The position numbers were made by a program, and so were the translations under genes. From Macrostomum lignano (lineage: Eukaryota): DNA of 64,000 bases. Location of the stretch: contig NIVC01000513.1 in the NCBI GenBank assembly GCA_002269645.1, positions 186,001 to 250,000 of the forward strand, in the 5' to 3' direction. The notes below the pieces were generated by a model. That model did not search any database and was not told the origin of the DNA. It worked only from the letters and a program-made list of their open reading frames with translations. How positions within the stretch are numbered: position 1 is the first letter of the stretch; each line of letters starts with the position of its first letter. Of this stretch, positions 9,211-61,745 are shown piece by piece.

Positions 9211-10583
9211 CCGAACTTGTCTCTCTAATCAATGTTCACAGACTAAGAAAAGAGGGCCGATTGCTTCTTAATTTATTGTAGAGTAGAATAGCGAAAAACT
9301 CTATTTTGACTACTTAAAGTAAATCTTCTGTTTGAGACACTCCTATCCTGTGTAATCGCGTTTTTTGTTACTTTTAAACCGAGCCGAAAACAAATTCAAG
9401 TTACCAGAGAAATAATTATTAGTGCCAGCGCGTCCGTTTCAGAAATCGGAAAATTAGAAATTCAAAATGCCGCTGTTTTTTAACTTTTTTAAAGGTGTGA
9501 GTGTGTATTTTAACCGCATAATCGTTTCCTTGTTTTGAGATTGGATCCGCGCTGTCATTTAATACGTCTGCCTCCCAATTATCGTTGTTGTCAAACATTT
9601 TTCAAAGCTAATTAGTTTTTTCAGAGAAACTTCGAGTATGAAAGCTTATGTCATTTTAAAAGGTCACCATTTGGTGTTAAACAAAAATTATAAGCTTTCT
9701 TGGTTATTAGTTCTATTTTCTGTTTTAATATTAAAGTAGGGCATTGCTATTATGTATTGCCACTATTCTGCTCTCATATTATGCGTTTTCATATAGTCAG
9801 TGTGATGCGATTTCAGTTATTAGCCTTGTGCATTATTTATGATCATTATTTCCTTTCAAATAGCGATCTTTAAACCTGGGCTCGGCAAGAGAGGGGAGTG
9901 GAGGGGAGATGAGGGAACAATGCTGAGAAAAGACAGACTTTAAGCAGCCCGGATAGAGAGGTTTAGGGGGCGAGCCGGGCTTTGCCGACCGATGCTTTAA
10001 AGCAATAGTCGCCATGAATATCCTGTCTGTATCTAAATATAATAAATACATATGCTATTCATCATTATTAAACCTCTAATGCTACTGTTCATATTATAAT
10101 TAAATTACCTTTCCTTGTGATAACAGTATAAATGCTTTATTCAATTAACTAATACACATTTATTCAGCAAAATAAAAAGGGACAAAAACAAACCATTTTA
10201 CAAAAATTCTGCTTTTTCAAATTCAACTATTAATGAAAAGTGTATTATTTTGTTCGATACATGGAGACAGGTAAATGCATCAGATAAGAGAAGAGAAATA
10301 AAAAGCAGAATTCAGTGTCTTGTTAATTGAATGCACACCCTTCTGCGGGTCTACCTCGAAGAAAGCGGTACCTAGGGCAAAGAAGAGTCAGTTTGAAGCG
10401 TTTTATTGTCTGCGACTCTGGGCTGGGTCCGTACAGTCGTATCTGAGGCGTGCTAGAATCACTGAGTTGCGTCTAAAGTGCATCTGCCTCATTTTATAAA
10501 TTAGAATCGAATTTCGTATTTTTATCAACTGTGTTTGGTCTACTTGAGTTAGTAGAAACTAGAAAGATAAGTACTAACACAAC

Positions 10584-12269
10584 CAGGGGCGTCGCCATGG
10601 ATTTTATGGTGGGGGGACAAAGAAAATTATACATGTACATTATTTTCAGAATCGGTGTTGTCAGCACTCATTTTAGCGCCTCGGGCACTCATTTTAGCGC
10701 CGCAGGCACTCATTTTAGCGCCGCAGGCACTCATTTTAGCGCCTCAGGCACTCATTTTAGCGCCGCAGGCACTCATTTTAGCGCCGCAGGCACTCATTTT
10801 AGCGCCGCAGGCACTCATTTTAGCGCCTCAGGCACTCATTTTAGCGCCTCAGGCACTCATTTTAGCGCCTCGGGCACTCATTTTAGCGCCGCAGGCACTC
10901 ATTTTAGCGCCTCAGGCACTCATTTTAGCGCGGCAGGCACTCATTTTAGCGCCTCAGGCACTCATTTTAGCGCCGCAGGCACTCATTTTAGCGCCTCGGG
11001 CACTCATTTTAGCGCCGCAGGCACTCATTTTAGCGCCTGGGGCACTCATTTTAGCGCGGCAGGCACTCATTTTAGCGCCACAGGCACTCATTTTAGCGCC
11101 GCAGGCACTCATTTTAGCGCCTCGGGCACTCATTTTAGCGCCTCGGGCACTCATTTTAGCGCCGCAGGCACTCATTTTAGCACCGCAGGCATTCATTTTA
11201 GCGCCTCAGGCACTCATTTTAGCGCCTCAGGCACTCATTTTAGCGCGGCAGGCACTCATTTTAGCGCCTCAGGCACTCATTTTAGCGCCGCAGGCACTCA
11301 TTTTAGCGCCTCGGGCACTCATTTTAGCGCCTCTGGCACTTATTTTAGCGCCTCAGGCACTCATTTTAGCGCCGCAGGCACTCATTTTAGCGCTGCAGGC
11401 ACTCATTTTAGCGCTGCAGGCACTCATTTTAGCGCCTCGGGCACTCATTTTAGCGCCGCAGGCACTCATTTTAGCGCCTCAGGCACTCATTTTAGCGCCT
11501 CAGGCACTCATTTTAGCGCGGCAGGCACTCATTTTAGCGCCGCAGGCACTCATTTTAGCGCCGCAGGCACTCATTTTAGCGCCGCAGGCACTCATTTTAG
11601 CGCCTGGGGCACTCATTTTAGCGCCTCTGGCACTCATTTTAGCGCCGCAGGCACTCATTTTAGCGCCACAGGCACTCATTTTAGCGTCACAAGCACTCAT
11701 TTTAGCGCCTCAGGCACTCATTTTAGCGCCTCTGGCACTCATTTTAGCGCTGCAGGCACTCATTTTAGCGCCTCTGGCACTCATTTTAGCGCCTCAGGCA
11801 CTCATTTTAGCGCCGCAGGCACTCATTTTAGCGCTGCAGGCACTCATTTTAGCGCCTGGGGCACTCATTTTAGCGCCTCTGGCACTCATTTTAGCGCCTC
11901 TGGCACTCATTTTAGCGCCTGGGACACTCATTTTAGCGCTGCAGGCACTCATTTTAGCGCCTGGGGCACTCATTTTAGCGCCTCTGGCACTCATTTTAGC
12001 GCCTCAGGCACTCATTTTAGCGCCGCAGGCACTCATTTTAGCGCTGCAGGCACTCATTTTAGCGCCTGGGGCACTCATTTTAGCGCCTCTGGCACTCATT
12101 TTAGCGCCTCAGGCACTCATTTTAGCGCCGCAGGCACTCATTTTAGCGCCGCAGGCACTCATTTTAGCGCCGCCAGGCACTCATTTTAGCGCCGCCAGGC
12201 ACTCATTTTAGCGTCCAAATAGCGGCACTATGTTTTGTCGCCCTGTCCCCCCTGTTGGCGACGCCCCTG
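10584..12269. mobile_element. Non-autonomous TIR element (hAT/MITE-like) with a central 21-bp tandem array
   Basis: Perfect 14-bp TIR CAGGGGCGTCGCCA ... TGGCGACGCCCCTG; subterminal GGGGGGACA / TGTCCCCCC; flanking 8-mers AACACAAC and AACATGAC (6/8), a possible decayed 8-bp TSD. Confidence 0.8.
10664..12213. repeat. Minisatellite, 21-bp unit GGCACTCATTTTAGCGCC+NNN (~73 copies)
   Basis: Constant 18-nt core plus a variable 3-nt slot (GCA/TCA/TCG/TCT/TGG/ACA). Confidence 0.98.
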
Positions 12270-12362: not shown

Positions 12363-12585
12363 GGGGTTGTAGCTTAGTAGTTATAGCGGCGGACTCACGA
12401 CTTGAAGGTCGGGGGTTCGAGTCCCGATCCCACTTGAACAATTTGTGTCCTTGAGCAAGACACTTAACTCTGCATTGCTTCAGTTCACCCAGCTGTAAAA
12501 TGGGTGCCAGCATTAGCTGGGGTAATTGTGGGTGTGTGTGGCGACCCCCCAGTCCTTGGACTGAACAGCCGTACGCAGCTTTCAG
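12363..12585 (+). mobile_element. tRNA-derived CORE-type SINE
   Basis: tRNA-like head GGGGTTGTAGCTTAGTAGTT (A box) ... GGTTCGAGTCC (B box), then TGTGTCCTTGAGCAAGACACTTAACTCT...CTTCAGTTCACCCAGCTGTAAAATGGG, closely resembling the MIR/CORE domain. Confidence 0.85.
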
Positions 12586-17044: not shown

Positions 17045-18367
17045 CTGTGTTGGACAGACTGGGCTGGTGTTGGATAAACTGGGAAGGTGTTGGATTGATT
17101 GGGATGGTGTTGGATAAACTGGGATGGTGTTGGATAGACTGGGCTGGTGTTGGATAGACTGGACTGGTATTGGATAAACTGGGATGGTGTTGGATAAACT
17201 GGAATTGTGTTGGATAAACTGGGATGGTGTTGGATTGATTGGGATGGTGTTGGATAAACTGGGATGGTGTTGGATAGACTGGGCTGGTGTTGGATAGACT
17301 GGACTGGTATTGGATAAACTGGGATGGTGTTGGATAAACTGGAATTGTGTTGGATAAACTGGAATTGTGTTGGATAAACTGGGATGGTGTTGGATAAACT
17401 GGAATTGTGTTGGATAAACTGGGATTGTGTTGGATAAACTGGGATGGTGTTGGATAAACTGGGATGGTGTTGGATAGACTGGACTGGTATTGGATAAACT
17501 GGGATGGTGTTGTATAAACTGGAATTGTGTTGGATAAACTGGGATGGTGTTGGATAGACTGGACTGGTATTGGATAAACTGGGATGGTGTTGGATAAACT
17601 GGAATTGTGTTGGATAAACTGGGATGGTGTTGGATAAACTGGAATTGTGTTGGATAAACTGGGATGGTGTTGGATAGACTGGAATTGTGTTGGATAAACT
17701 GGGATGGTGTTGGATAAACTGGAATTGTGTTGGATAAACTGGGATGGTGTTGGATAGACTGGAATTGTGTTGGATAAACTGGGATTGTGTTGGATAAACT
17801 GGGACGGTGTTGGATAGACTGGAATTGTGTTGGATAAACTGGGATGGCGTTGGATAAACTGGAATTGTGTTGGATAAACTGGGATTGTGTTGGATAAACT
17901 GGGATGGTGTTGGATAGACTGGAATTGTGTTGGATAAACTGGAATTGTGTTGGATAAACTGGGACGGTGTTGGATAGACTGGAATTGTGTTGGATAAACT
18001 GGGATGGTGTTGGATAAACTGGAATTGTGTTGGATAAACTGGGATTGTGTTGGATAAACTGGGATTGTGTTGGATAGACTGGAATTGTGTTGGATAGACT
18101 GGACTGGTATTGGATAAACTGGGATGGTGTTGGATAAACTGGAATTGTGTTGGATAAACTGGGATGGTGTTGGATAGACTGGAATTGTGTTGGATAAACT
18201 GGGATGGTGTTGGATAAACTGGGATGGTGTTGGATAAACTGGAATTGTGTTGGATAAACTGGGATTGTGTTGGATAAACTGGGATTGTGTTGGATAGACT
18301 GGGATGGTGTTGGATAAACTGGGATTGTGTTGGATAGACTGGGCTGGTGTTGGATAGACTGGACTGG
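17045..18367. repeat. Minisatellite, 20-bp unit TGGATAAACTGGGATGGTGT and variants (~65 copies)
   Basis: Long tandem array; source of the spurious 585-aa ORF. Confidence 0.97.
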
Positions 18368-18869
18368 TGAAGAATCGATGGGTCGATGTTTAGTGTATAT
18401 AATCAAGCCTGAGGGATAAGAAGGCCCAGAAACAGTGCCGAGTTTCTGCTGCAAAACAGGCTCATAACCCTGAAAAACTAGGAAGCGCACATCGATCGTC
18501 ACACCGGCCATTCCGGACCAGAACCGACACTCAATAAAAAATCTTATGTGTCCCTTCTCCACTCCGGCTCCGCTACTCTTCACTAGAAAGACCGGGAATT
18601 AAACGCCAATGACTGTAAGTATACAGCCTGATTGAACCCCGCCCTTGAAATCCCAATCGCGTATCCATAATAGATCCCCCTTTTTTCTATCCCACCCACT
18701 CCAACATGCCAACGCCCTGAGAGGGACCAAGGCAGAGTGAGAAGGGCAGAGAGGCCAAACCAACTTTTGCGACATTCCCTGAAAACTCCCCCAAGTGTAC
18801 GCACTAAAGTCTCAAGCGCTGTGTACGCGGGACTCTAGGGATAAAGAAGTGAGGAGAGAGCAGAGAATA

Positions 18870-26334: not shown

Positions 26335-29300
26335 GTATAGTCTTTTTGTGAATATAATTCACTTCAATAACAAAGTAGATTTACAACTACTGACAATTTA
26401 TAGTAATTAACTTTTGAAACTATTAGTTCAGTCAAATCTGTCAAATCTGGCATACCCTGCCCCAGGTGCAAGGGGAGTGCTTCAAAAAGGTCCAGTCTTT
26501 TGGCCTGCGAGCCTATAAATACAAACCCCCTACAGACCCCTACAGACCCCACAGACCCCATAGTTTACCACTTCTATTCCTCTTTATTTAAAGAGCTATA
26601 CAAAGAAAATTAAATGGACAACTCCATTGACTTCCTACAAGATCTAATTGGCAATCTATCAGAAGATATGGAGCCACCGCTAGTGCCCAACATTGATAAA
26701 AAAGGCATCACTTCATTGCCTAACGCAACCGAAGGTACCCGGCATAAGCAACAAATGGCCAAGGACATCACTGCAGGCATCATCATCGCCTTGCTGCCAA
26801 ATGAAGTCAGATGACCCTGAGCAAAAATGAGCCACTCTTGGGGGACTAATTTGCAGAGATATACTAGAGTTTTGCCGTGACCCTCTAGTCTTGGTAATGC
26901 CCAATTAGACTAACTCATGTATCAGCTAGACTGCTCAGGCCATACATTAGATGCTACTAGAATTAGACATTAGACACTACTAGAGTAATACATTAGATGC
27001 TACGAGTACCAGACTAATATATTAGAGGCTATCTAGAAGTGTATTAAAGAGAAATCATTAACTGATTCTAAGAAATAATTAGAGATATAAATAGGACAAC
27101 TTTGATAGCAGCCTATAGAATATTTAAAAGACAGAGGAAGACACACCTATCACAGCTGGTAGTATCAGACCATCAATAGAGTTTATAATATAGAAAAACA
27201 AGAAGCCTGTTATAACTGGTGACTAATAGACTAATTGGTAAGATTGTTTTAAAGGATAGAAGTGACATATATCTGCTATAGGCCTTATTTCTTAAATAGT
27301 AGTTTTTCATTCATATTTTAATAACCAATTTGTCAAGCATCTATTTATTAAATAATGGACAAATAAAACAAAATATATTGTTTAACTAAAGACTAAAATT
27401 AGTTAAGGTTAAACTAAAAAGTAAAGTATATCACTAATTTGTTTTTAATTAAATATGCTGTAAGGCCTAGGCCTAGTAGTTGAAAATTAATTTTTTTCAT
27501 TGGTCTATTTATTCTTATGAACCTTATTGAATAATTAAGTACTAGGCCTAATATATAATTAGACCTATAATATAATAATCCCAAATCATAATAGGCCTGC
27601 CACCTACCTAGGACCTAGATCCAGTAGCCTAACTAGGGGGGGGGGTGGGTAGGGGCAGAGGGCAGTTGTTACCATCTTCCCATCCTCCCCCCATTTTTTT
27701 AGAGGTAGAGACTAGAAAGAAAATCAAAGCATTGTCGAGGCGGCCTTAGCCCTAGTCTAGAAAATGGGTAGTATACCAGATTAATCTAGCATAGGCCTAT
27801 ACTCGCAACTTTTGACATACAATTTTTTTTTAAATTTGGCATACTATTTGGTGTAAAAAATGGATAGTGAAAAAGTGGCATACATCATGATACATGTTCT
27901 TGCAATTGCAAAATCAAATAGTAAAATAAATTTAAATTTAAATGGAATTATAGAAAGTACTTATTTTGAAAGAATGAAAGAAATCTTGGCATGTATTGAC
28001 ATCCCGCCATAAAGAGTATCAGCAAACAAGCAAAAAAGTGAAATGAAAGAGCAAAATAGGTTATTCAATGCACCACAAAGGCACAATATAAGAAATAAGG
28101 CTTATAATGAGGCTTATTTTTTCTGTAAATCTGGGATTTTAATTTAGGGTTGGAAAAAATGTGGCATATACTGGCATACTAAAAAAATTGTGGGAGATTT
28201 TAGTCTGGCGTACATTCAGGGTGTTCCAAACTATGGAAAAGGGGGACCAAGTGAATTTTAATTTTTTGCCAAAATACAAAGCCTGGAGAGCTGCACCTCC
28301 TCTGCCCTCTTGGGTCCTTACCCTTCAGAATCCATCCCCCCCAACAATTTCTGGTTGCACTACTGGCTAGGTCCTAGCCTCAGCCCTCAGAAATATTAGA
28401 AATGAAAAATCAATGAAACAATTTGGCTTCTTAAAGACAAGTACAAATAGTCAAAACATTGTTTTTAACCAGTAGAAAAGATGTTGGTATTGACTAAAGT
28501 CGTAATAACTGTTGTAAATGAAATAATTCAAACTTTTTCATATCGGCTCTCGCCCCTCCCTGGGCCTTGCCCTTGGACTTGAGGACACGGGACAGAATTG
28601 GTCCATTGGACCATATTTATGCACATTGCACAAAGACAAAAATTCAACCTTTAATTTGGTCTAATCTATAATCCACATTACTAAAACTGCTCGTCATAGA
28701 AGTATTCTAGTTTTTTGCATTATCTTGAGCACTGAACAGCTTGAGCGAGCCAGCTTATGAACTGTAAACTAAAGAGTGTGAACTCGATCGGCTTAAATTT
28801 GAAAACTTTCTGTGAACTATTGTTCATTATAACAAAGCTAGTTTTTTTTATTTTAAGTAACTAAAAATTTTGTTTTTAGGCTAAAAGAGCTTATGCTTTA
28901 CTACAAAATTTGTTACAAAAAGTAGAAGACTAGAAGACATAATTTCTATTTCGAGGGTAAATAATATGCTTTTAACACGACAACCTGCTGAAAATTACTC
29001 GATTCCTTCTGGCCTGGCTTGATTTGACTCTCCTGATTCCTTTGTAGTTAGTTTGTTGCCAATGATAAATGGCTTTGCCCTCAATTCATTGGTTGTCTTC
29101 TATCGCAGAAGACTCTGTTGAACAGCTTAAAAGGTATTTTTAACTTCTGAACAAGAGTTCATTTGCTTTCGCTCATGAGTTTTACAAAAAAATATTATAT
29201 TTTGTATTTCTATAAATAATGATTAAACAATATAAATTTCTAATATAACAAGTAAAGTATTAATATAAAGGGCTAGCGAAAAATTGGGTCAATGGCGTTT

Positions 29301-29537
29301 TGTAAGAAATGCATTTCTTTCAGCCAACAACTGCTCCCTTGTAATGTAAGTCTCAATGCTCTAGGTTCTTTCTTTTCCTCGACACAATTCCTTTATCCAA
29401 CTCATAGAAGCCGCGATATCCATATTGATCTCATTTAAAAAATTTTGAATCAGCATGTATTCTTTTTAAGAACTCTGACAAGGGCTCAGATACAACAATA
29501 ATCAGGGTTCGTGCACTCATTAAACCCATTATTTCAG

Positions 29538-32500
29538 ACACAACACAGCTATAACGGAGACTAGGAATAATGATTTGTATTTGCACGGAGGGTTCAAGCT
29601 TTCGAAGGTGAGAATACATTTTTGAAGATAGAATTTTTGCTTAATGCATTCCTGCGGAAATTCCTAACTTTGATCTGATTTATGCAATTTTCCAGTCTGG
29701 AAAGAAAATCACATTCTACAACGACATCTGGAAAATCTCAGGTACATTGGACTAAATTGATTATTAAATTTCTGTGCAGTAATACTTTCAAAGATGGACA
29801 AATATCTTAAAAGAATTTATACATAACCTTCTTTATCAGCTGGCATCATAAAATTCATTTTTTCAGTTCAGGATAGTCAAAGATTAAAATGTGTGAAAAT
29901 TTCGTCAGGGCATGGAGACGTGCCTGAGGCCAGGGCCTATCACCACTTGCAGTAAGTGCCCCCTTTTGCACTATTTGTAGTAGTAAATTTGCTAACTTTA
30001 TCACAACTTTATCAACCAGATAAATACAAATCTGAACTTAAGAACTGTCATTGACAGAACGAAAAAATATATTTTTTTAATAATGTATTTTTTTAATTCC
30101 AGCCTATTCGAGAATTTATTAATCCTGTTTGGCGGCAAGAGCAATCTTAATGAGGCCTCCTGCATTCCCGGAACCTACCAGTTCGACGTTTGTAAGCGAT
30201 TCTAGTGTTGCATTTCAATGATATGAAATTGTATGCAGTATGACCCTCATAAGCGCTACACTTACCGTACAATGTCAAGGACTAATATAAGGCCATGCAG
30301 AGACGTAGCCTAGGCGCAAGGGGGTCACGGCCCCTCTCAATTGGCTGGCTAAAATTATGGCGCTCTTCTGACAGCTGATTTATCGCCCCATGCAGCAGTT
30401 GAGGCGCCTCTGCTCCCATTTTTTCAGTTTCCTAATGCGTGATTATTTTGTTTTTGGCGCAACTGATGCTGGCGCCTCTGGTGCTGGCGCCTCTGGTGCT
30501 GGCGCCTCTGGTGCTGGCGCCTCTGGTGCTGGCGCCTCTGGTGCTGGCGCCTCTGGTGCTGGCGCCTCTGGTGCTGGCGCCTCTGGTGCTGGCGCCTCTG
30601 GTGCTGGCGCCTCTGGTGCTGGCGCCTCTGGTGCTGGCGCCTCTGGTGCTGGCGCCTCTGGTGCTGGCGCCTCTGGTGCTGGCGCCTCTGATGCTGGCGC
30701 CTCTGATGCTGGCGCCTCTGGTGCTGGCGCCTCTGGTGCTGGCGCCTCTGGTGCTGGCGCCTCTGGTGCTGGCGCCTCTGGTGCTGGCGCCTCTGATGCT
30801 AAAGCCCGTTGCTAGCGCTCTTACCCCTTAAAGCCCATCGACGCCCCTAAGGTAGTAAAAGCCGAGTTGATATCCTTAAATTTTTCATTCCGATGTTGAA
30901 AAGCCCAAAAATCTGCAAATAAACTCTGCAGTGGTGCGCAAGTGGACCCACGTCAAGGCCAGCGGAGAGGAGCCCGAGCAGGTGTACAACACCAGCAACA
31001 TGATCGAATCGCAGCTTGTTGTATTCGGCGGCCATAGCAACGGCGTCCTTAGCAATACGACGTTTGTGTACGACATCATGGCGCAGCACTGGCACCGGGC
31101 AACGGTCAGCGGCGCGCCGCCGTCGCCCAGATGCGAACACGCGGCCGCTGCGGCGGGCCAGAGCCTGTACGTGTTCGGAGGCACCGGAGGTCAGGGCTGC
31201 TTTTACAACGACTTGCACCAGCTGGACACTGGTGAGTGGCCCCGGTACTCAAAGACAAGTAAAAGTGGATGAATAGTTTCATAGCCAGGGACTCACAGAG
31301 ATGATGCATGTATGTGTATTTGTCAACTGGTCTTGACGGTTGAGCTATGGACCTCGCACGTTCATAATTGCGGATTCCAGCTTCATTAGCATGGATTCCA
31401 GCTTCATTAGCATGGATTCCAGCTTCATTAGCATGGATTCCAGCTTCATTAGCATGGATTCTAGCTTCATTATCATGGATTCCAGCTTCATTAGCATGGA
31501 TTCCAGCTTCATTAGCATGGATTCCAGCTTCATTAGCATGGATTCCAGCTTCATTAGCATGGATTCCAGCTTCATTAGCATGGATTCCAGCTTCATTAGC
31601 ATGGATTCCAGCTTCATTAGCATGGATTCCAGCTTCATTAGCATGGATTCCAGCTTCATTAGCATTGATTCCAGCTTCATTAGCATGGATTCCAGCTTCA
31701 TTAGCATGGATTCCAGCTTCATTAGCATGGATTCCAGCTTCATTAGCATGGATTCCAGCTTCATTAGCATTGATTCCAGCTTCATTAGCATGGATTCCAG
31801 CTTCATTAGCATGGATTCCAGCTTCATTAGCATGGATTCCAGCTTCATTAGCATGGATTCCAGCTTCATTAGCATGGATTCTAGCTTCATTAGCATGGAT
31901 TCCAGCTTCATTAGCATGGATTCCAGCTTCATTAGCATGGATTCCAGCTTCATTAGCATGGATTCCAGCTTCATTAGCATTGATTCCAGCTGAACTAAAT
32001 ACCATATTTTCCAGTCAGTTGAATCTTCATAAAGCATCGAAAGCGCTGAAGTTCAAATGGCCTCTACTTACAGTAGCCAATTCAGAATAATTTCCCGATT
32101 TCTGCAGCCACCCTGCAGTGGTCGCGCGTCCCAGTCGAGGGTCACCTGCTGCCGATGCCGCGAGCCGGGCACAGCCTCACCGCGCACCAGTCCAAGGACC
32201 TGTTCCTATTCGGGGGTTACAACGACTGCGTGTTCCCGGATGGCGGCCCGGTCCAGGAGCCGCTGATGAAGTTCAGCCTCTACAAGCGGACTTGGAAGGT
32301 GCCGTCGGCTCTGCCAGCGTCTGGTGGGCAGCCGGAGAACCTGATCCACCACGGTGCCTGGATACACCGGCACATGTGCTACATCTTCGGGGGCGCGGGT
32401 CTGGAGGACAGCGCCAGCCTGATTCGCATCTTTCGCATCATCAACCCCAAGAAGCGCAAGGGTGAGACTGGGGATTATGATATGGAATTTAATCGAGAAC

Positions 32501-34239
32501 TAGAATTAGGTAGAAAAAGAGAATTAGGGACTTCATATTGCTCTATTTGGGGGTAAAATGTCAATTTATTCAGTCTGAGTTAATCTTGATTGATATCATC
32601 ACTGTCGCGTGCGTGCAAGAGGGACTCTCTGGTGCGGCACAGCAACCCATGAATCCAACACCTCAGTTCTAGAAAGGTAAAACCTGTCTTTTAACTCGTT
32701 TTGTGAGTCAAGTCTCGAACTGGGCGTAAGCTGGGATATTAAGAGAGCTACTCGAAAAGGCTCGAAAAGACGGATGGTTGATCGCAGAACTTGCATAGCT
32801 ACAGGGACTCTCGATCCATTAGTGTCGAGTGTTGTCCTTGAACTGATGAACTGTTCTGAAACAATTTGTTACTAAATTATGCGTTAATTTATCGCATTTA
32901 GAATACCTGGCCGCTCTCAACCAATGCGAGAATGAAGAGGATCTTGAATGGGATTCCGAGGTAGGAGCAATACGCAATTATCAATATTTTTATACGAAAT
33001 TTTCCCGGAGTAATTATGATTTATGATTAAGTGCGAACTGAATTCTACAGGCGCACGGCCAGCACTCCTTGTCACGGATGAGCAGCGCTCGTTCCAGCGC
33101 CCGGAGTCTCAACCCGAGGCCCTTCAGCGTGGTGAGTTTGATAAATTCTTTGATGTGCCGCTACTATCCTAGATTCTTTGATGTGCCGCTACTATCCTAG
33201 ATTCTTTGATGTGCCGCTACTATCCTAGATTCTTTGATGTGCCGCTACTATCCTAGATTCTTTGATGTGCCGCTACTATCTAAGATTCTTTGATGTGCCG
33301 CTACTATCCTAGATTCTTTGATGTGCCACTACTATCTAAGATTCTTTGATGTGCCGCTACTATCCTAGATTCTTTGATGTGCCACTACTATCTAAGATTC
33401 TTTGATGTGCCGCTACTATCCTAGATTCTTTGATGTGCCGCTACTACCTAAGATTCTTTGATGTGCCGCTACTATCTAAGATTCCTTGATGTGCTGCTAC
33501 TATCCTAGATTCTTTGATGTGCCGCTACTATCCTAGATTCTTTGATGTGCCGCTACTATCTAAGATTCTTTGATGTGCCACTACTATCTAAGATTCCTTG
33601 ATGTGCCGCTACTATCCTAGATTCTTTGATGTGCCACTACACTATCCTAGAAATTAAAATTTGATTTCAAGAATTCGATCTTATTCTTGACAAGTCCTTT
33701 TAAAAGTACACGTGCGTCTTGTCTTTAAAAATAGAGGTTATCTGCCTCGAACCAAAACATGTTTTAAGCGATATTATGTACTTTTTCTTAACTCTGTTTG
33801 AGATAAAAGGGCTACTCACTATCCTATCACCTGAGAGCATTGTCGCTGCATGAGTAAATATCTGTATCTCAGTCTGAGTTATTTTGACTCACTAATAGCC
33901 ATCCTAGAACCTCATGTCTGTGTTCTAAAATTGCAAAGCTTTCTGTCAACAAAAGTTCACCAGCCAAAGCTAGTATACCACTATTGTTCAAGCAAGAAAT
34001 TTAAAAGCCACGTCTTCTCGCAGTAGCTACTGCTTCTTGCTGACTTGTACACTATTCTTTGATTTGTTTTCAAGTTCCCATTTCATTTCCATAGGGAAAA
34101 AGTAGAAACAGCAAGATTCGCTCCCATCCCACAGAACTACCAAGGGGGTCGCGGCGAGAGGCAGCCGGTTCTGTCCAAGGAGGAGAATGACCGGGCTGTA
34201 GAGTTGCTGATGGAGCGAATGAAAAAGATGGACATTTGA
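29538..34239 (+). CDS. Kelch-repeat beta-propeller protein (RABEPK/KLHDC-like), at least 9 exons, 5' end not resolved
   Basis: Phase-consistent GT-AG exons 29538-29607, 29696-29741, 29867-29951, 30103-30191, 30932-31231, 32108-32461, 32902-32960, 33051-33131, 34075-34239. Repeats DLYLHGG, FYNDIWK, PEARAYH, LLILFGG, LVVFGG, PSPRCEHAA...LYVFGG...FYNDLH, PMPRAGHS...LFLFGG, YIFGG. Confidence 0.88.
30298..30849. mobile_element. Probable degenerate MITE related to the 10584-12269 element, with a central 15-bp array
   Basis: Left CAGAGACGTAG versus right CGACGCCCCTA (about 7/10 inverted match); lies in kelch intron 4. Confidence 0.55.
30468..30800. repeat. Minisatellite, 15-bp unit GCTGGCGCCTCTGGT (~22 copies)
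   Basis: Near-perfect array. Confidence 0.97.
31372..31990. repeat. Intronic minisatellite, 21-bp unit GGATTCCAGCTTCATTAGCAT
   Basis: Fills kelch intron 5. Confidence 0.97.
33146..33650. repeat. Intronic minisatellite, 28-bp unit TTCTTTGATGTGCCGCTACTATCCTAGA
   Basis: Starts ~15 nt after the donor of the last kelch intron. Confidence 0.97.
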
Positions 34240-35232
34240 GTATACCCGAGATTATCTGCAGCAGCTGAACTGTTTCAGGTTCAACATGATCAAAAAGTTT
34301 TACCCAAAGACAACTTTAATGTAGAAACTTTGCGACTAACTGAAGCCTCTAACCAAAAATGTTGTTTATGAATGAAGTTGCCTATAAATAAAAAGTATTT
34401 CTTATATAATATATTAAAAGTAACAGAAAAATGATTTAAAAAAAGATATTCTGGATCTTTGTCTCCTCGTTCAGTAGCTATTTTGACGCCATTTTGTTTG
34501 TTTGTTATAATTAACTTATTTAATTCCGCAGTTGCTGAAACGAAAGTGGCAGAAAAACAAATTTTAACCTAACCCTATATATCTTTGTTGCTCAAAATAT
34601 ATTCTTTAGAAGCTGAAGTAAACAAACAATGAACGTTAAAAAATTATATATTTAATTACTGCCTGTGTCAAACTGTACGTATCGGCTTGTTTAATCGTTA
34701 TTCTGAGAATATTTTTATAAATTGTAATTCTGCGTATTTATCACGAATCCCACATACGTAATTTAAATAATTTTTAACTCCTTGTTTTAATTTGGGATTA
34801 ACTTTTACTTCCCTCATTTTTTAAGAGTAATTGTCAAATATATAGCTCTGAATTCTCAATATGAGTCTACCTTTTATCGTGACTCGTGTATTGTGTGTTA
34901 ACTAAATCAAAATTATTTGAATAATATTAATAAATAATAAAATCTTAAAATGAAACTTTCATTAAAACAAAAAACTTGAAAATAGCCAATTTTGACGGCA
35001 CCTCGCAAAATCACAATTGATGTGCAGAAACAATCGATCTCACTACAGTAAGATCGCCGACTGGTAAAGTCCAATGATCAACTATTTATTAATTGTTTAC
35101 AATTGCGGGCTCATCACATTGCAAAAAGATATTACATCAGAACAATAACTGTTCATGCCGTGTACTTTATTAGTTCAACTTGGTGACATTGTGCGAGAGA
35201 CTTCTTAGAAACAAGCCAACTTTGAACTGGAT

Positions 35233-35659
35233 TCAGCCGAATCTGAAAGTAACCAGTTTTGTTATAAATTGGTGATTTAGTTTTTTCAAACGTCTCGAAT
35301 ATACTTGTAATTCGACGTCATAAAAACCTCACCGAATTCGAACCACGTCTTCTCCGGGCTCCTCAGCTGCCAGAGCGGCCGCGAGCTGCTTGGCGGCGGC
35401 GGCGGTGGCGGCTCCACCTTGTTGCCGATGCTCCGGCGAAGTTAGCAGCAGGCGGTACAGACTCCGCTCCAGCTTGTCAAGCGAAGCATGCCGCGGTCTG
35501 ATCAGGCGGATTCCAGATTGGTCTTCTTCCAGCTCGTCGACGCTTGAGCAATGCGATGGAGCCATCATCGACAGTGCCACCAGGCTCACCAGAAGTACCT
35601 GAAGACCCGGCAGGGGCGAAACAGCACACAGTGACCAACCTAACTAACTAACTGGCTAG

Positions 35660-35716
<57 letters not shown>

Positions 35717-35779
35717 AAACAAACAAACAAACAAACTAACTAAATAACTGACCTGCAGGCAGAAGATTCGTAGCGTCAT
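35233..35779 (-). CDS. RFamide-type neuropeptide precursor, 3 coding exons, 100 aa, ending ...GEDVVRIRFG-stop
   Basis: Exons 35779-35753 (MTLRIFCLQ), 35598-35333 and 35242-35233. Donors GTCAGT and GTGAGG; acceptors TTCAG. Hydrophobic signal peptide; the splice CG|A TTC GGC TGA gives RFG-stop; AATAAA lies ~70 nt past the stop. Confidence 0.8.
35638..35746. repeat. (TAAC)n/(AAAC)n microsatellite in neuropeptide intron 1
   Basis: Direct reading. Confidence 0.95.
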
Positions 35780-36119
35780 GTCGGCTTCAGTACTTTATCT
35801 GTAGGTTTCTCAAGTAGATTTCGATTTTTCTCGGTTCAGCGCGGCGGGCGAAGACCTGCTGCATCTCAGGTCGGCCTCCTAAATAGACGATTCAGCCTCC
35901 GAAAATTTGCAGTGGATCTGATGATGACAGCGGATTAAGGAAGGCACGGGACAGCGAATCAAAATGCGACACCAGCAACTCTACTGGGAGGCCCTCCAGC
36001 TGCTGGTCTCATGCAGGAAGGTCTCATGCAGCATTGTGGTCTCTTGATCGGTCCGCGGAAGTCACTCAGTCGCTCATTCACTTACTCAGTTACACAGTTC
36101 CTCAGCCGCAAAACCATCT

Positions 36120-37440
36120 TGTGACTCAATCATTCAGTGACTCAATCATTTAGTGACTCAATTATCTAGAGACTCAATCATTCAGTGAATCAATCATTCA
36201 GTGACTCAATCAATCAATGAATCAATCATTCAGTGACTCAATCATTCAGTGAATCAATCATTCAGTGACTCAATCATTCAGTGACTCAATCATTCAGTGA
36301 CTCAATCATTCAGTGAATCAATCATTCAGTGACTCAATCATTCAGTGAATCAATCATTCAGTGAATTAATCATTCAGTGACTCAATCATTCAGTGAATCA
36401 ATCATTCAGTGACTCAATCATTCAGTGACTCAATCATTCAGTGACTCAATCATTCAGTGAATCAATCATTCAGTGACTCAATCATTCAGTGAATCAATCA
36501 TTCAGTGAATCAATCATTCAGTGACTCAATCATTCAGTGAATCAATCATTCAGTGACTCAATCATTCAGTGACTCAATCATTCAGTGAATCAATCATTCA
36601 GTGACTCAATCATTCAGTGACTCAATCATTCAGTGAATCAATCATTCAGTGACTCAATCATTCAGTGACTCAATCATTCAGTGACTCAATCATTCAGTGA
36701 ATCAATCATTCAGTGACTCAATCATTCAGTGAATCAATCATTCAGTGAATCAATCATTCAGTAACTCAATCATTCAGTGAATCAATCATTCAGTGACTTA
36801 ATCATTAAGTGACTTAATCAATCAGTGACTTAATCATTCAGTGAATCAATCATTCAGTGAATTAATCATTCAGTGACTCAATAAATCAGTGAATCAATCA
36901 TTCAGTGACTCAATCATTCCAATCATTCAGTGACTCAATCATTCCAATCATTCAGTGACTCAATCATTCAGTGACTCAATCATTCAGTGAATCAATCATT
37001 CAGTGAATCAATCATTCAGTGACTTAATCATTCAGTGACTCAATCATGAAGTGACTCAATCATTCAGTGACTCAATCATGAAGTGACTCAATCATTCAGT
37101 GACTCAATCATGAAGTGACTCAATCATTCAGTGAATTAATCATTCAGTGACTCAATCATTCAGTGACTCAATCATGAAGTGACTCAATCATTCAGTGAAT
37201 TAATCATTCAGTGACTCAATCATTCAGTAACTCCATCATTCAGTAACTTAATCATTCAGTAACTTAATCATTCAGTGACTCAATCATTCAGTGAATCAAT
37301 CATTCAGTGACTCAATCAATCAGTGACTTGATCATTCAGTAACTCAACTATCCAGAGACTCAATAATTCAGTTACCTAATCATATAGTGATTCAATCTTT
37401 TAGTGACTCAATCATTCAGTTACTCCATCATCCAGTGACT
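36120..37440. repeat. Minisatellite, 16-bp unit TCAATCATTCAGTGA(C/A)
   Basis: Long tandem array. Confidence 0.97.
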
Positions 37441-37699
37441 CAACTAGACAAAGCACTTCCTCCTATCAATATGCTACAGAGGCAGCAACAGCAGGATGTG
37501 TTTACACCATTCTCAGGTCATTCCGTCCTATGATATAGCTCAGTCCATCGACTCGCTGTCCCAAAATCTGCTTTGGTTAGTCGAGACCAAAAATAATCGA
37601 GGCCTCAGCAGCATATCGGATTTCCTGACGGCGGATCACTTTGGAATATGAGAAATCACACAGGCCCACCTCAGCTCACTGGAATGAAAATTCCCAGTG

Positions 37700-38650
37700 A
37701 CAGAATGACAGAGTGACAAAATGATAGAGTGACACAATGATAGAGTGACAGCATGATAAAGTGACACAATGATTGAGTGACAGAATGATTGAGTTACAGA
37801 ATGATAGAGTGACACAATGACAGATTGACACAATGATAGAGTGACACAATGACAGATTGACACAATGATATAGTGACACAATGATAGTGACACAATGATA
37901 GAGTGACACAAGGATAGAGTGACGGAATGATAGAGTGACAGCATGATAAAGTGACACAAGGATAGAGTGACACAATGATAGAGTGACACAATGATAGAGT
38001 GACAGCATGATAAAGTGACACAATGATAGAGTGACACAATGATAGAGTGACAGCATGATAAAGTGACACAATGATAGTGACACAATGATAGAGTGACACA
38101 ATGATAGAGTGACACAATGATATAGAGTGACGGAATGACAGAGTGACAGAATGATTGAGTGACAGAATGATAGAGTGACAGCATGATAGAGTGACACAAT
38201 GATAGAGTAACAGCATGATAAAGTGACACAATGATAGAGTGACGCAAGGATAAAGTGACACAATGATAGTGACACAATGATAGTGACACAATGATAGAGT
38301 GACACTATGATAGAGTGACAGAATGATAGAGTGACACAAGGATAGAGTGACACAATGATAGAGTGACACAAGGATAGAGTGACGGAATGATTGAGTGACA
38401 CAATGATAGAGTGACACAAGGATAGAGTGACACAATGATAGAGTGACACAATGATAGGGACACAATGATAGAGTGACACAATGATAGAGTGACACAAGGA
38501 TAGAGTGACACAATGATAGAGTGACACAATGATAGTGACACAATGATAGAGTGACACAATGATAGTGACACAATGATAGAGTGACACAATGATAGTGACA
38601 CAATGATAGAGTGACACAAGGATAGAGTGACGGAATGATTGAGTGACAGA
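37700..38650. repeat. Minisatellite, 16/14-bp unit GATAGAGTGACACAAT
   Basis: Tandem array with variants. Confidence 0.96.
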
Positions 38651-39089
38651 TGAGAGTGATGCGGAATGAGTGATAAGCATGCAGGCAGGACAGTACAAAC
38701 AACTTGAATGTGAATCCTTGCGCACTACTAGTAGTAGGCTATATCAGTAGTCTGACAAAGAAGCTCAAGCTTACAAGCTGGCGGAATTAATATGAATTAT
38801 GCTGTTTCAAGTGTCCCAAGAGAACTCAGCTTTGAATCTATGATTCTGCTCAAGCATCGAATACCCTTACCTGCAGGAGTTCAATCAATGCGTCAAAAAA
38901 TGAATAATTCAAGCCTTAAGTCAGGTCTCGACTTGTTTACCTGCATGTCGCACGCCAGCTAATCTAAATGAAAGTTTCATCAAAAGATAATTATTTTTCA
39001 TTAGGCTATCATTATTTTCCCAATAATGAAACTCCTGAAATATTCACCAGATACGTAGATGGGCATTGACAAGATACAGTTCAGTGAGC

Positions 39090-51989: not shown

Positions 51990-52955
51990 CGACTTCACAT
52001 CTCCGACACTTCATATCTCCGACACTTCCATTTCTCCGACACTTCATATCTCCGACACTTCATATCTCCGACACTTCATTTCTCCGACACTTCATATCTC
52101 CGACACTTCATATCTCCGACACTTCATATCTCCGATACTTCATATCTCCGACACTTCATATCTCCGACACTTCATATCTCCGACACTTCATATCTCCGAC
52201 ACTTCATATCTCCGACACTTCATATCTCCGACACTTCACATCTCCGACACTTCATATCTCCGACACTTCATATCTCCGACACTTTATATCTCCGATACTT
52301 CATATCTCCGACACTTCATATCTCCGACACTTCATATCTCCGACACTTCATATCTCCGACACTTCATATCTCCGACACTTCATATCTCCGACACTTCACA
52401 TCGCCGACACTTCACATCTCCGACATTTCATATCTCCGATACTTCATATCTCCGACACTTCACATCTCCGACACTTCATATCTCCGACACTTCATATCTC
52501 CGACACTTCATATCTCCGACATTTCATATCTCCGACACTTCATATCTCCGACACTTTATATCTCCGACACTTCACATCTCCGACATTTCATATCTCCGAC
52601 ACTTCATATCTCCGACACTTCACATCGCCGACATTTCATATCTCCGACACTTCACATCTCCGACACTTCATATCTCCGACACTTCATATCTCCGACACTT
52701 CATATCTCCGACATTTCATATCTCCGACACTTCATATCTCCGACACTTCATATCTCCGACACTTTATATCTCCGATACTTCATATCTCCGACACTTCATA
52801 TCTCCGACATTTCATATCTCCGACACTTCATATCTCCGATACTTCACATCTCCGACACTTCATATCTCCGACACTTTATATCTCCGACACTTCACATCGC
52901 CGACACTTCACATCTCCGACACTTCACATCTCCGATACTTCACATCTCCGACATT
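51990..52955. repeat. Minisatellite, 16-bp CTTCATATCTCCGACA (~60 copies)
   Basis: Tandem array; source of the spurious 348-aa ORF. Confidence 0.97.
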
Positions 52956-53289
52956 TCGCTCTAAATTTATAATAAATAAATAAATGAATGGATATTGACA
53001 ATTCGAATTTTATGGAGTGGTATATATTTCTTTCCGAATAATGAGACACTCAACAGTTATTACAGGAGTCTACATGGGTAGTGCAGTCTCGCAGGGTGGG
53101 ATATAGGATAATATGCGCGAATGCTAGGATTAAGGATTAACAAAACAGTCTGTCCTGATCAAATTTTCCTGATCACTGATCAATCCTGATCTTCCTGATC
53201 GCTTCGATACCTGCAGGGGAATAACGCACTGACTTCAAAGAAACATGGGAAAATAACAGCTGAGATGGACTGAAACGATATATATCGAC

Positions 53290-60599: not shown

Positions 60600-61500
60600 A
60601 AGGATTAGGAATTTGAGGACCAAGGACTTTCGGGTCAGGAATTTGAGGGTCAGGGATTTAAGAATCAGGGATGCGAGGATCAGGGATTTGGGGATCAGGG
60701 ATTTGAGGATCAGGGATTTGAGGATCAGGGATTTGAGGATCAGGGATTTAAGAATCAGGGATGCGAGGATCAGGGATTTGGGGATCAGGGATTTGAGGAT
60801 CAGGGATTTGAGGATCAGGGATTTGAGGATCAGGTATTTGAGGATCAGGGATTTGAGGATCAGGGATTTGAGGGTCCCAAGGACTTTCGGGTCAGGAATT
60901 TGAGGATCAGGGATTTAAGAATCAGGGATGCGAGGATCAGGGATTTGGGGATCAGGGATTTGAGGATCAGGGATTTGAGGATCAGGGATTTGAGGATCAG
61001 GGATTTGAGGATCAGGGATTTGAGGATCAGGGATTTGAGGATCAGGGATTTGAGGATCAGGGATTTGAGAATCAGGGATTTGAGGATCAGGGATTTGAGG
61101 ATCAGGGATTTGAGGGTCCCAAGGACTTTCGGGTCAGGGATTTGAGGATCAAGGGATTTGAGGATCAGGGATTTGAGGATCAGGGATTTGAGGATCAGGG
61201 AGTTGAGGATCAGGGAGTTGAGGATCAGGGATTTGAGGATCAGGGATTTGAGGATCAGGGAGTTGAGGATCAGGGATTTGAGGATCAGGGATTTGAGGAT
61301 CAGGGATTTGAGGGTCCCAAGGACTTTCGGGTCAGGGATTTGAGGATCAAGGGATTTGAGGATCAGGGATTTGAGGATCAGGGATTTGAGGATCAGGGAT
61401 TTGAGGATCAGGGAGTTGAGGATCAGGGAGTTGAGGATCAGGGATTTGAGGATCAGGTATTTGAGGATCAGGGATTTGAGGATCAGGGATTTGAGGATCA
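60600..61500. repeat. Minisatellite, 15-bp GGATTTGAGGATCAG with higher-order blocks
   Basis: Marker CCAAGGACTTTCGGGTCAGG recurs at 60620, 60877, 61119, 61317. Confidence 0.96.
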
Positions 61501-61745
61501 GATTTGAGAAACAAGTAGGCAACAGAACTAAGAGAAATACGAGTATTCTGGAGATTTTACCTTGATGCCTAACTGCTTTTTTGATAAGCGAGTATATCTT
61601 CTGTAGTAAATTTAAAATTTTCTCATAATTATTTGAGCTGATAAAAAGAAGAATTGCATGGAAAATTGTATTGAAATATACGTGTACTAATAAAAAGTAG
61701 TAGGAAAATAAACGTCAACGAAAATGTATAGTACAATTTTTCTTT

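What the first reader, a model, noticed from the sequence alone, without database searches (positions are those of the whole stretch)
35233..35779. Hidden RFamide neuropeptide precursor completed by a phase-2 intron in the penultimate Arg
Seen: the unspliced ORF ends VVRIR-stop, but the CGGTGAGG there is also a donor. A 90-nt intron joins CG to A TTC GGC TGA, giving EDVVRIRF-G-stop, with a signal peptide from a separate first exon. Established: C-terminal Gly is the amidation donor, and NPY/NPF-family genes carry an intron splitting this same Arg codon. Inference: an NPY/NPF/PrRP-related but atypical peptide, since it lacks the NPF tyrosines and GRPRF and has no dibasic sites. Annotation pipelines would likely miss the amide.
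Basis: partly seen in the sequence, partly recalled or inferred. Interest (0 to 1): 0.8.

Follow-up and report, generated by a model that had tools for sequence, protein, structure and literature searches.

The report
Divergent NPF-like RFamide prohormone gene
This is a real three-exon flatworm (Macrostomum lignano) gene for a small secreted protein ending in ...RIRF-Gly; it has the splice architecture typical of neuropeptide F/Y genes but no other sequence likeness to them, and GenBank already holds the exact spliced product as a 'hypothetical protein'.

Summary
On the minus strand there are three coding exons: 35779-35753, 35598-35333 and 35242-35233. The introns are GT-AG, 154 nt and 90 nt. 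The second intron sits between bases 2 and 3 of an Arg codon (CG|A). Splicing replaces VVRIR-stop with VVRIRFG-stop.

The gene is not hidden. The window is Macrostomum lignano contig NIVC01000513.1, and the exact 100-aa spliced product is in GenBank (PAA81771.1/PAA82424.1, 'hypothetical protein', plus a third copy). That annotation was built only from RNA-seq transcripts, so both junctions have indirect transcript support.

The canonical NPF gene of the same genome (...AGRPRFGKR) is split at the identical CG|A position, and the literature treats this intron as the NPY/NPF hallmark. Gly-stop endings also occur in planarian prohormones, including NPY-7.

Nothing else resembles NPF:
- there is no Pfam PF00159 match
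- profile and pairwise scores are insignificant
- the conserved Tyr/Pro residues are absent
- 73 residues follow the signal peptide, with no dibasic site
- a search of 1.84 billion representative proteins found no homologues

PrRP, sNPF, FLP and NKY membership were tested and rejected. Best reading: a lineage-specific, highly divergent NPF-type RFamide prohormone. This is plausible but functionally unproven, and of moderate interest.

The parts
35753..35779 (-). Coding exon 1: ATG plus 8 codons (MTLRIFCLQ), the first part of the signal peptide. It ends at CAG|GTCAGT (phase 0).
   Evidence: the GenBank CDS start matches (gene span 547 nt = 35779..35233)
35599..35752 (-). Intron 1: 154 nt, GTCAGT...TTCAG, largely a (TTTG)n/(TTAG)n microsatellite. 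It is expanded to about 595 nt in copy NIVC01000471.1 and is 12 nt longer in NIVC01000157.1.
35333..35598 (-). Coding exon 2: 266 nt. It encodes the rest of the signal peptide (to about Cys26, 35548-35598), an acidic/basic spacer, an Ala-rich predicted helix and ...EDVVRI plus the first two bases (CG) of Arg98.
35243..35332 (-). Intron 2: 90 nt, GTGAGG...TTTCAG, phase 2 inside Arg98 (CG|A). If the intron is retained the frame stops at once (CGG TGA), giving ...VVRIR.
   Evidence: The same position and phase occur in the canonical M. lignano NPF gene.
35233..35242 (-). Coding mini-exon 3: A TTC GGC TGA. It completes Arg98 and adds Phe99, Gly100 (the amidation donor) and the stop codon.
   Evidence: the annotated product ends RFG
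35166..35171 (-). AATAAA polyadenylation signal 62 nt after the stop codon (a second one lies at 35085-35090).
   Evidence: sequence pattern only; actual use not shown
35787..35864 (-). Possible upstream ORF: ATG...TGA, 25 codons, ending 7 nt before the main ATG. It is relevant only if the transcription start lies further upstream.
   Evidence: read directly; the transcription start site is unknown

Best explanation
This is a transcribed three-exon gene of the flatworm Macrostomum lignano (locus family Mlig021140, three near-identical copies). It encodes a 100-aa secretory preproprotein.

Proposed mechanism:
1. Removal of the 90-nt phase-2 intron joins CG to A-TTC-GGC-TGA. The in-frame stop that overlaps the donor is bypassed and the protein ends ...Arg-Ile-Arg-Phe-Gly.
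2. The signal peptide is cleaved at about residue 26.
3. The terminal Gly is used by peptidylglycine alpha-amidating monooxygenase to give ...VVRIRF-NH2. No convertase or carboxypeptidase step is needed at the C-terminus, because Gly is the last residue.

The N-terminal limit of the mature peptide is uncertain. It would be 73 residues if uncleaved. It would be 31 residues (Q69-F99) in the g1 copy, which has an R67-K68 site.

The RxRF-Gly end split by a phase-2 intron in the Arg codon matches the NPY/NPF gene hallmark and the canonical NPF gene of the same genome. So the gene is most likely a lineage-specific, extremely divergent offshoot of the NPF/NPY prohormone family, acting as a secreted RFamide ligand for an NPF/RFamide-type GPCR.

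Shown: the gene structure, identity with a transcript-derived annotation, and the shared intron position.
Inferred: signal-peptide cleavage, amidation, neuronal or endocrine expression, the receptor, and descent from NPF.
For: - Gene model and coordinates.
- The exact 100-aa product is in GenBank for three copies, with CDS spans consistent with removal of exactly these two introns.
- The NIVC01 annotation was made only from RNA-seq-derived transcripts (StringTie/TACO/de novo assembly plus TransDecoder).
- The architecture occurs once in 64 kb against 0.04 expected.
- The intron between nt 2 and 3 of the Arg codon of RF/RY is the accepted NPY/NPF marker across phyla, including planarians.
- The canonical M. 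lignano NPF (P0094...LALAGRPRFGKR) is split at the same CG|A position.
- Gly-stop endings occur in planarian prohormones: Smed-NPY-7 (with 59 residues after its signal peptide), npp-3 and npp-4.
- The N-terminus has signal-peptide features.
- M. lignano has a PC2 homologue expressed in the nervous system and GYIRFamide-type neurons.
Against: - There is no detectable sequence similarity to NPF/NPY beyond R-x-R-F-G. Pfam PF00159 is absent. hhalign against seven Smed NPY prohormones gives 9% probability. Smith-Waterman z-scores are below 3, against 6-14 for the canonical M. lignano NPF.
- Pro and Ala occupy positions 10 and 17 from the C-terminus, where NPFs usually have Tyr.
- 73 residues follow the signal peptide and this copy has no dibasic site.
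- No orthologue was found in 1.84 billion representative proteins or by the word-indexed search.
- The three copies are about 99% identical, introns included. Copy g1 versus g2 differs by 2 nonsynonymous and 1 synonymous change, so there is no evidence of purifying selection.
- There are no expression, peptidomic or receptor data.
- The ORF is exactly 100 aa. From my own knowledge, that is TransDecoder's default minimum length, so annotation alone does not prove the gene is coding.
Confidence: 0.55

Rival explanations
1. It is a lineage-specific small secreted protein, an orphan gene unrelated to NPF. The C-terminal RFG and the intron position would be coincidental or convergent. It may or may not be amidated and is not a ligand of the NPF system.
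For: No sequence similarity to any NPF. No homologues anywhere. The pro-region is long and Ala-rich, unlike 36-40-aa NPFs. The structure model has low confidence (pLDDT 53.5).
Against: The joint occurrence of a signal peptide, R-x-R-F-G-stop and a phase-2 split of the same CGA Arg codon as the genome's own NPF gene is improbable by chance. The field uses exactly this intron to assign NPY/NPF orthology, for example for C. elegans FLP-27.
Confidence: 0.27
2. It is not a functional coding gene. A low-level transcript happens to carry an ORF that just reaches the ORF caller's length threshold, and the RFamide-like end has no meaning.
For: The ORF is exactly 100 aa. There is no evidence of selection between copies, no homologues and no literature or supplement mention of Mlig021140.
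Against: The N-terminus has good signal-peptide features. Both introns have canonical splice sites that are kept in all three copies. An AATAAA lies 62 nt after the stop. The NPF-type terminal module is specific.
Confidence: 0.1
3. It belongs to another known RF/RYamide family: PrRP/sNPF, flatworm FLPs of the (G)YIRFamide type, or spiralian neuropeptide KY (NKY).
For: - The C-terminal IRFamide resembles flatworm YIRFamide/GYIRFamide (spp-11).
- NKY precursors also place one long R[YF]-Gly peptide at the extreme C-terminus and occur in flatworms.
- There is a weak local match to Platynereis NKY-2 (SPEHRQQGGAA against SVPHQQEGGAA, z = 4.0, p = 0.003).
- hhalign gives 26% probability on a spacer motif.
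Against: - PrRP genes have a phase-1 intron elsewhere, and sNPF and FLP precursors are multi-copy with dibasic flanks.
- The invariant NKY-2 core WIWMPAQGY...GKIMRYG is absent.
- The one NKY-2 gene examined is a single uninterrupted ORF (...ATG CGT TAC GGT TAA) with no intron in the Arg codon.
Confidence: 0.05

Closest known systems
Flatworm neuropeptide F / NPY-superfamily prohormone genes (M. lignano Mlig016961 NPF; Schmidtea mediterranea npy-1 to npy-11, especially npy-7)
   Same: A signal peptide and a single C-terminal peptide ending R-x-R-F followed by the amidation Gly. A phase-2 intron sits between bases 2 and 3 of the Arg codon; it is the same CG|A split as in the M. lignano NPF gene. 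The precursor ends at Gly-stop and has a longer-than-usual pro-region, as in Smed-NPY-7.
   Different: It has RIRF rather than (G)RPRF/Y. It lacks the conserved Tyr/Pro and the L..YL..LN..Y core. There is no PF00159 hit and no significant profile or pairwise similarity. 73 residues follow the signal peptide instead of about 30-45. This copy has no dibasic site. There is an extra phase-0 intron in the signal peptide.
Spiralian neuropeptide KY (NKY-1/NKY-2) precursors
   Same: A precursor of about 100-140 aa with a spacer and one long peptide at the extreme C-terminus, ending R-Y/F-Gly(-K/stop). NKY is described as an NPY paralogue and is present in polyclad flatworms.
   Different: The invariant WIWMPAQGY...GKIMRYG core is missing. 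Only a short, weak match exists. The NKY-2 gene examined has no intron in the Arg codon.
Flatworm FMRFamide-like peptides (YIRFamide, GYIRFamide; e.g. Smed-spp-11, npp-4)
   Same: The C-terminal -IRFamide motif and precursors that can end in RFG-stop.
   Different: FLP precursors encode several short copies flanked by KR/RR. This gene has a single terminal RFG and no repeats.

Membership tests
NPY/NPF superfamily | C-terminal R-x-R-F/Y followed by Gly (amidation donor) | tested here: met
   The spliced CDS ends R96-I97-R98-F99-G100-stop. Amidation itself was not tested.
NPY/NPF superfamily | Intron between nt 2 and 3 of the codon for the Arg of the terminal RF/RY | tested here: met
   The split is CG|gtgagg...tttcag|A at 35333/35242. 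The control M. lignano NPF gene is split at the same CG|A.
NPY/NPF superfamily | Sequence similarity to the family (Pfam PF00159 pancreatic hormone domain; profile match) | tested here: not met
   There is no PF00159 hit at E<=10. hhalign against 7 Smed NPYs gives 9% probability. The candidate is absent from the profile search that found M. lignano NPF. Pairwise z-scores are below 3.
NPY/NPF superfamily | Conserved Tyr at positions 10 and 17 from the C-terminus, and N-terminal prolines (PP-fold) | tested here: not met
   Pro is at position 10 and Ala at position 17 from the C-terminus. The only Tyr is Y57. The AF2 model is too poor to judge the fold.
NPY/NPF superfamily | Single peptide of about 36-40 aa directly after the signal peptide or after a dibasic site; Gly followed by a dibasic site and a C-terminal flanking peptide | tested here: not met
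   73 residues lie between the predicted signal cleavage site and Gly. This copy has no KR/RR/KK and ends at Gly-stop. There are partial precedents: Smed-NPY-7 ends GRPRYG-stop with 59 residues after its signal peptide, and copy g1 has an RK site that would give a 31-mer.
NPY/NPF superfamily | Activates an NPY/NPF-type GPCR | not testable with these tools
   This needs receptor pharmacology.
PrRP / sNPF | PrRP: a phase-1 intron in the N-terminal or central part of the peptide. sNPF: several short copies. | tested here: not met
   The introns here are phase 0 (in the signal peptide) and phase 2 (in the terminal Arg), and there is a single RFG.
Neuropeptide KY (NKY-2 type) | Invariant core NNGxWIWMPAQGYVSVP...GKIMRYG at the precursor C-terminus | tested here: not met
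   The core is absent. hhalign against the 28-sequence NKY-2 alignment gives 26% probability on 15 spacer columns only. The NKY-2 gene in L005 has no intron in the Arg codon (one example only).
Flatworm FLPs ((G)YIRFamide type) | Multiple short RFamide copies flanked by dibasic sites | tested here: not met
   There is one terminal RFG, no repeats and no dibasic sites (compare Smed-spp-11 and npp-4).

The most novel reading that the evidence does not exclude
Only the terminal 'amidation cassette' of an NPF gene survives here: R-x-R, the phase-2 intron, and a 10-nt mini-exon encoding (R)FG-stop. The rest of the peptide has been replaced or expanded. The product would be an unusually long (31-73 aa) Ala-rich secreted RFamide hormone specific to macrostomid flatworms, with its own receptor specificity. 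This would be an extreme case of NPF-family divergence, or of exon shuffling of the NPF terminal module onto an unrelated secreted protein.
Probability: 0.18. Interest if true: 0.55.

Novelty: new variant of a known kind. Interest (0 to 1): 0.35.

Why it matters
If the peptide is real, the NPY/NPF gene architecture can persist after the peptide sequence has diverged beyond recognition. This matters in two ways.

First, gene structure rather than sequence would be needed to catalogue flatworm neuropeptidomes. M. lignano, the only flatworm with stable transgenesis, would gain a tractable new RFamide ligand.

Second, it is a caution. The 'NPF intron' alone may over-assign orthology.

It would also add a candidate ligand for the expanded orphan NPY-like receptor repertoire of flatworms. 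In practice the gene is already annotated structurally, so what is new is a functional hypothesis, not a new gene.

Tried and rejected
1. Homologue searches found nothing useful. The word-indexed search of 5.8 billion proteins found only the M. lignano copies. The full HMMER scan of 1.84 billion representatives found only the query itself and two hits I treat as spurious: P0102 is a tandem-repeat artefact and P0103, a weaker 8-stretch match to a 1666-aa protein, was not examined.
2. Pfam gave only a sub-threshold Transketolase_C hit, which I rejected as noise.
3. Profile and pairwise comparisons with planarian and M. lignano NPFs showed no significant similarity.
4. The three genomic copies are about 99% identical, introns included, so they cannot be used to test selection.
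5. AlphaFold2 on the single sequence gave pLDDT 53.5. This is too poor for a fold search, so none was run.
6. The NKY hypothesis came from a short QQ-GGAA match. I rejected it after building the NKY-2 family alignment and checking one NKY-2 gene's structure.
7. Literature and supplement searches for RIRFamide, VRIRF and Mlig021140 found no prior description or expression data. McVeigh 2009 (PMC2749192) is not held.
I did it through the database id instead.

Full report
**1. What is in the sequence**

- Exon 1 is 35779-35753 (ATG ACG CTA CGA ATC TTC TGC CTG CAG, MTLRIFCLQ).
- Intron 1 is 154 nt (GTCAGT...TTCAG, phase 0) and is almost entirely a (TTTG)n/(TTAG)n microsatellite.
- Exon 2 is 35598-35333.
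- Intron 2 is 90 nt (35332-35243, GTGAGG...TTTCAG).
- Exon 3 is a 10-nt coding mini-exon, 35242-35233 (A TTC GGC TGA).

Without splicing, the frame reads ...GTT CGA ATT CGG TGA (VVRIR-stop), and the stop overlaps the donor. With splicing, CG + A restores Arg and the protein ends ...EDVVRIRFG-stop. The CDS is 303 nt and the product 100 aa. An AATAAA lies 62 nt after the stop.

The N-terminus looks like a signal peptide. It has Arg4, a hydrophobic core at residues 5-21, and small residues at -3/-1 of C26|S27.

I scanned both strands of the 64-kb window for this architecture: R-x-R with CG|GT or AG|GT, an intron of 40-1500 nt, an acceptor followed by N-F/Y-G-stop, and at least 60 open codons upstream. 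Only this locus was found. Block shuffles gave a mean of 0.04, and 8 of 200 had one or more.

**2. Where it comes from, and whether it was hidden**

The spliced protein is 100% identical over its full length to GenBank PAA81771.1/PAA82424.1, 'hypothetical protein BOX15_Mlig021140g2/g3 [Macrostomum lignano]'. A third copy, g1 (PAA89281.1), differs by S28R and Q68K.

The window is contig NIVC01000513.1 of assembly GCA_002269645.1 (Mlig_3_7). Its annotated CDS span is 547 nt, which equals 35779..35233. The other two copies have CDS spans of 985 and 556 nt and also yield 100 aa. These spans match the microsatellite length changes in intron 1 and a 3-nt deletion in intron 2, with all splice sites unchanged.

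Wudarski et al. 2017 state that this GenBank annotation was produced only from RNA-seq-derived transcript models, with ORFs called by TransDecoder. The transcript models came from StringTie/TACO plus a de novo assembly.

The claim that pipelines would miss the RFG end is wrong. What is missing is only a functional name. I found no paper or supplement that mentions this gene or an RIRFamide peptide.

**3. The NPF-type hallmark, with a control in the same genome**

Collins et al. 2010 and Yanez-Guerra et al. 2020 both describe an intron between the second and third base of the codon for the Arg of the C-terminal RF/RY. [quoted passage not shown] It has been used to assign orthology, for example for C. 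elegans FLP-27.

A profile of seven planarian NPY prohormones (sequences from Collins' Table S5) retrieved the canonical M. lignano NPF. This is BOX15_Mlig016961g1, which ends ...SELANYLMQLHSALALAGRPRFGKR....

In its genomic locus the coding sequence is split as ...GGA AGG CCT CG|gtaggt ... ttttcag|A TTT GGC AAG CGC. That is the same CGA Arg codon, split at the same point, as in the candidate (ATT CG|gtgagg ... tttcag|A TTC GGC TGA).

Ending the precursor at the amidation Gly is normal in flatworms. Smed-NPY-7 ends ...GRPRYG-stop and has 59 residues after its signal peptide. Smed-npp-3 and npp-4 also end RFG/RYG-stop.

**4. What does not fit NPF**

Beyond R-x-R-F-G there is no detectable similarity.
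- Pfam PF00159 is not hit.
- hhalign against the planarian NPY alignment gives 9% probability.
- The NPY profile search did not retrieve the candidate.
- Smith-Waterman z-scores against ten flatworm NPFs are all below 3. The canonical M. lignano NPF scores z = 6-14 against the same set.
- Pro and Ala occupy the positions (10 and 17 from the C-terminus) where NPFs usually have Tyr.
- The region after the signal peptide is 73 residues: an acidic stretch, IRLIRPRH, a Leu-rich segment, and an Ala-rich segment predicted helical at low confidence (pLDDT 53.5).
- This copy has no dibasic site. Copy g1 has R67-K68, which would release a 31-residue peptide (Q69-F99).
- A full HMMER scan of 1.84 billion representative proteins found no homologue apart from two hits I treat as spurious; I inspected only the stronger one, a repeat artefact.

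The three copies are about 99% identical, introns included. Copy g1 versus g2 differs by 2 nonsynonymous and 1 synonymous change, so they say nothing about selection.

**5. Other families considered**

- PrRP-type genes carry a phase-1 intron in the N-terminal or central part of the peptide, and sNPF precursors are multi-copy. Neither fits.
- Flatworm FLP precursors such as Smed-spp-11 (YIRFamide x3) are multi-copy with dibasic flanks. Only the -IRFamide tail is shared.
- Spiralian neuropeptide KY deserved a test. Its precursors place one long R-Y-Gly peptide at the extreme C-terminus, it has been described as an NPY paralogue, and it occurs in polyclad flatworms.
  - A short local match to Platynereis NKY-2 exists (z = 4.0, p = 0.003).
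  - The 28-sequence NKY-2 alignment has an invariant WIWMPAQGY...GKIMRYG core that the candidate lacks.
  - hhalign gives only 26% probability over 15 spacer columns.
  - The one NKY-2 gene I examined is a single uninterrupted ORF ending ATG CGT TAC GGT TAA, with no intron in the Arg codon.
  - NKY membership is rejected.

**6. Most likely mechanism**

Shown: a transcribed gene whose second intron must be removed to create the Phe-Gly end, and an intron position identical to the NPF gene of the same genome.

Inferred from established peptide-hormone biochemistry:
- co-translational signal-peptide cleavage near residue 26
- transport through the regulated secretory pathway
- conversion of the C-terminal Phe-Gly to Phe-NH2 by peptidylglycine alpha-amidating monooxygenase, with no need for convertase or carboxypeptidase trimming because Gly is terminal
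- action of the R-I-R-F-NH2 tail on an NPF/RFamide-type GPCR

M. lignano has a PC2 homologue expressed in the nervous system and RFamide-type neurons. I put 0.55 on the reading 'divergent NPF-derived amidated peptide precursor'. The rivals are an unrelated orphan secreted protein with a coincidental end (0.27), a non-functional ORF at the caller's length threshold (0.10) and another RFamide family (0.05).

**7. Novelty and verdict**

The gene is not new as an annotated object. The new element is the functional hypothesis that a 'hypothetical protein' is an NPF-architecture RFamide prohormone.

It fails several defining NPF features, so I do not file it as an NPF family member. I describe it as a new variant of a known kind: an NPF-type terminal module on an otherwise unrecognisable precursor. 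The interest is moderate. It is a good example of gene structure outliving sequence similarity, or a caution about relying on that intron. It is lineage-restricted as far as can be seen, and it has no expression, peptide or receptor evidence.

Noticed in passing
window 1-64000 (e.g. 10664-12213, 17047-18369, 36121-37443, 37696-38648, 51992-52957, 60601-61501): The window is packed with minisatellite arrays of period 10-60 nt. TRF reports 47 rows at score >=200, with up to 83 copies. Most ORFs of at least 150 aa in the mechanical ORF list lie inside these arrays (e.g. 37676-38725, 10531-12189) and look like repeat artefacts. This fits the high tandem-repeat content reported for the M. lignano genome.
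   Followed up: partly
window 35599-35752 (-); L001 about 10028-10622; L003: Intron 1 of the gene is itself a (TTTG)n/(TTAG)n/(CTAGCCAGTTAGTTAG)n microsatellite. Its length varies between the three genomic copies (154, 166 and about 595 nt), but the splice sites are intact.
   Followed up: yes
window about 29069-34239 (+) (mapped from L002 11541-16711): A 417-aa Kelch/beta-propeller protein gene lies tail-to-tail with the candidate gene. It is its neighbour in all three genomic copies, so the copies are segmental or whole-genome duplicates and not dispersed paralogues.
   Followed up: partly
L003 (NIVC01000157.1), codon 68 of copy g1; corresponds to window 35424: Copy g1 carries Q68K (plus S28R). 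This creates the only dibasic site (R67-K68) in any copy. The site is followed by Gln and would release a 31-residue peptide, QGGAAT...VVRIRF-NH2. It is unknown which allele is ancestral.
   Followed up: partly
window 12363-12432 (+): There is a weak tRNA-like Rfam match (31.6 bits against a gathering score of 29, E = 0.011). ARAGORN does not call it. It may be a degenerate or SINE-like tRNA relic.
   Followed up: no
window 35787-35864 (-): A 25-codon upstream ORF ends 7 nt before the main ATG. A TATTTAG motif lies about 20 nt upstream of its ATG, so the uORF may or may not be in the mRNA.
   Followed up: no
L005 1501-1869 (ENA ERZ26052378 contig ctg10271): An NKY-2-type neuropeptide gene of an unidentified spiralian sits on a 1.85-Mb contig. 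It is a single intron-less ORF ending IMRYG-stop. So NKY-2, although described as an NPY paralogue, lacks the NPY-type Arg-codon intron in this instance.
   Followed up: partly
L004 2001-3269 (NIVC01002694.1): The canonical M. lignano NPF gene (Mlig016961g1) is also labelled only 'hypothetical protein' in GenBank. It has Ala rather than Tyr at position 10 from the C-terminus, and its intron is 924 nt.
   Followed up: yes
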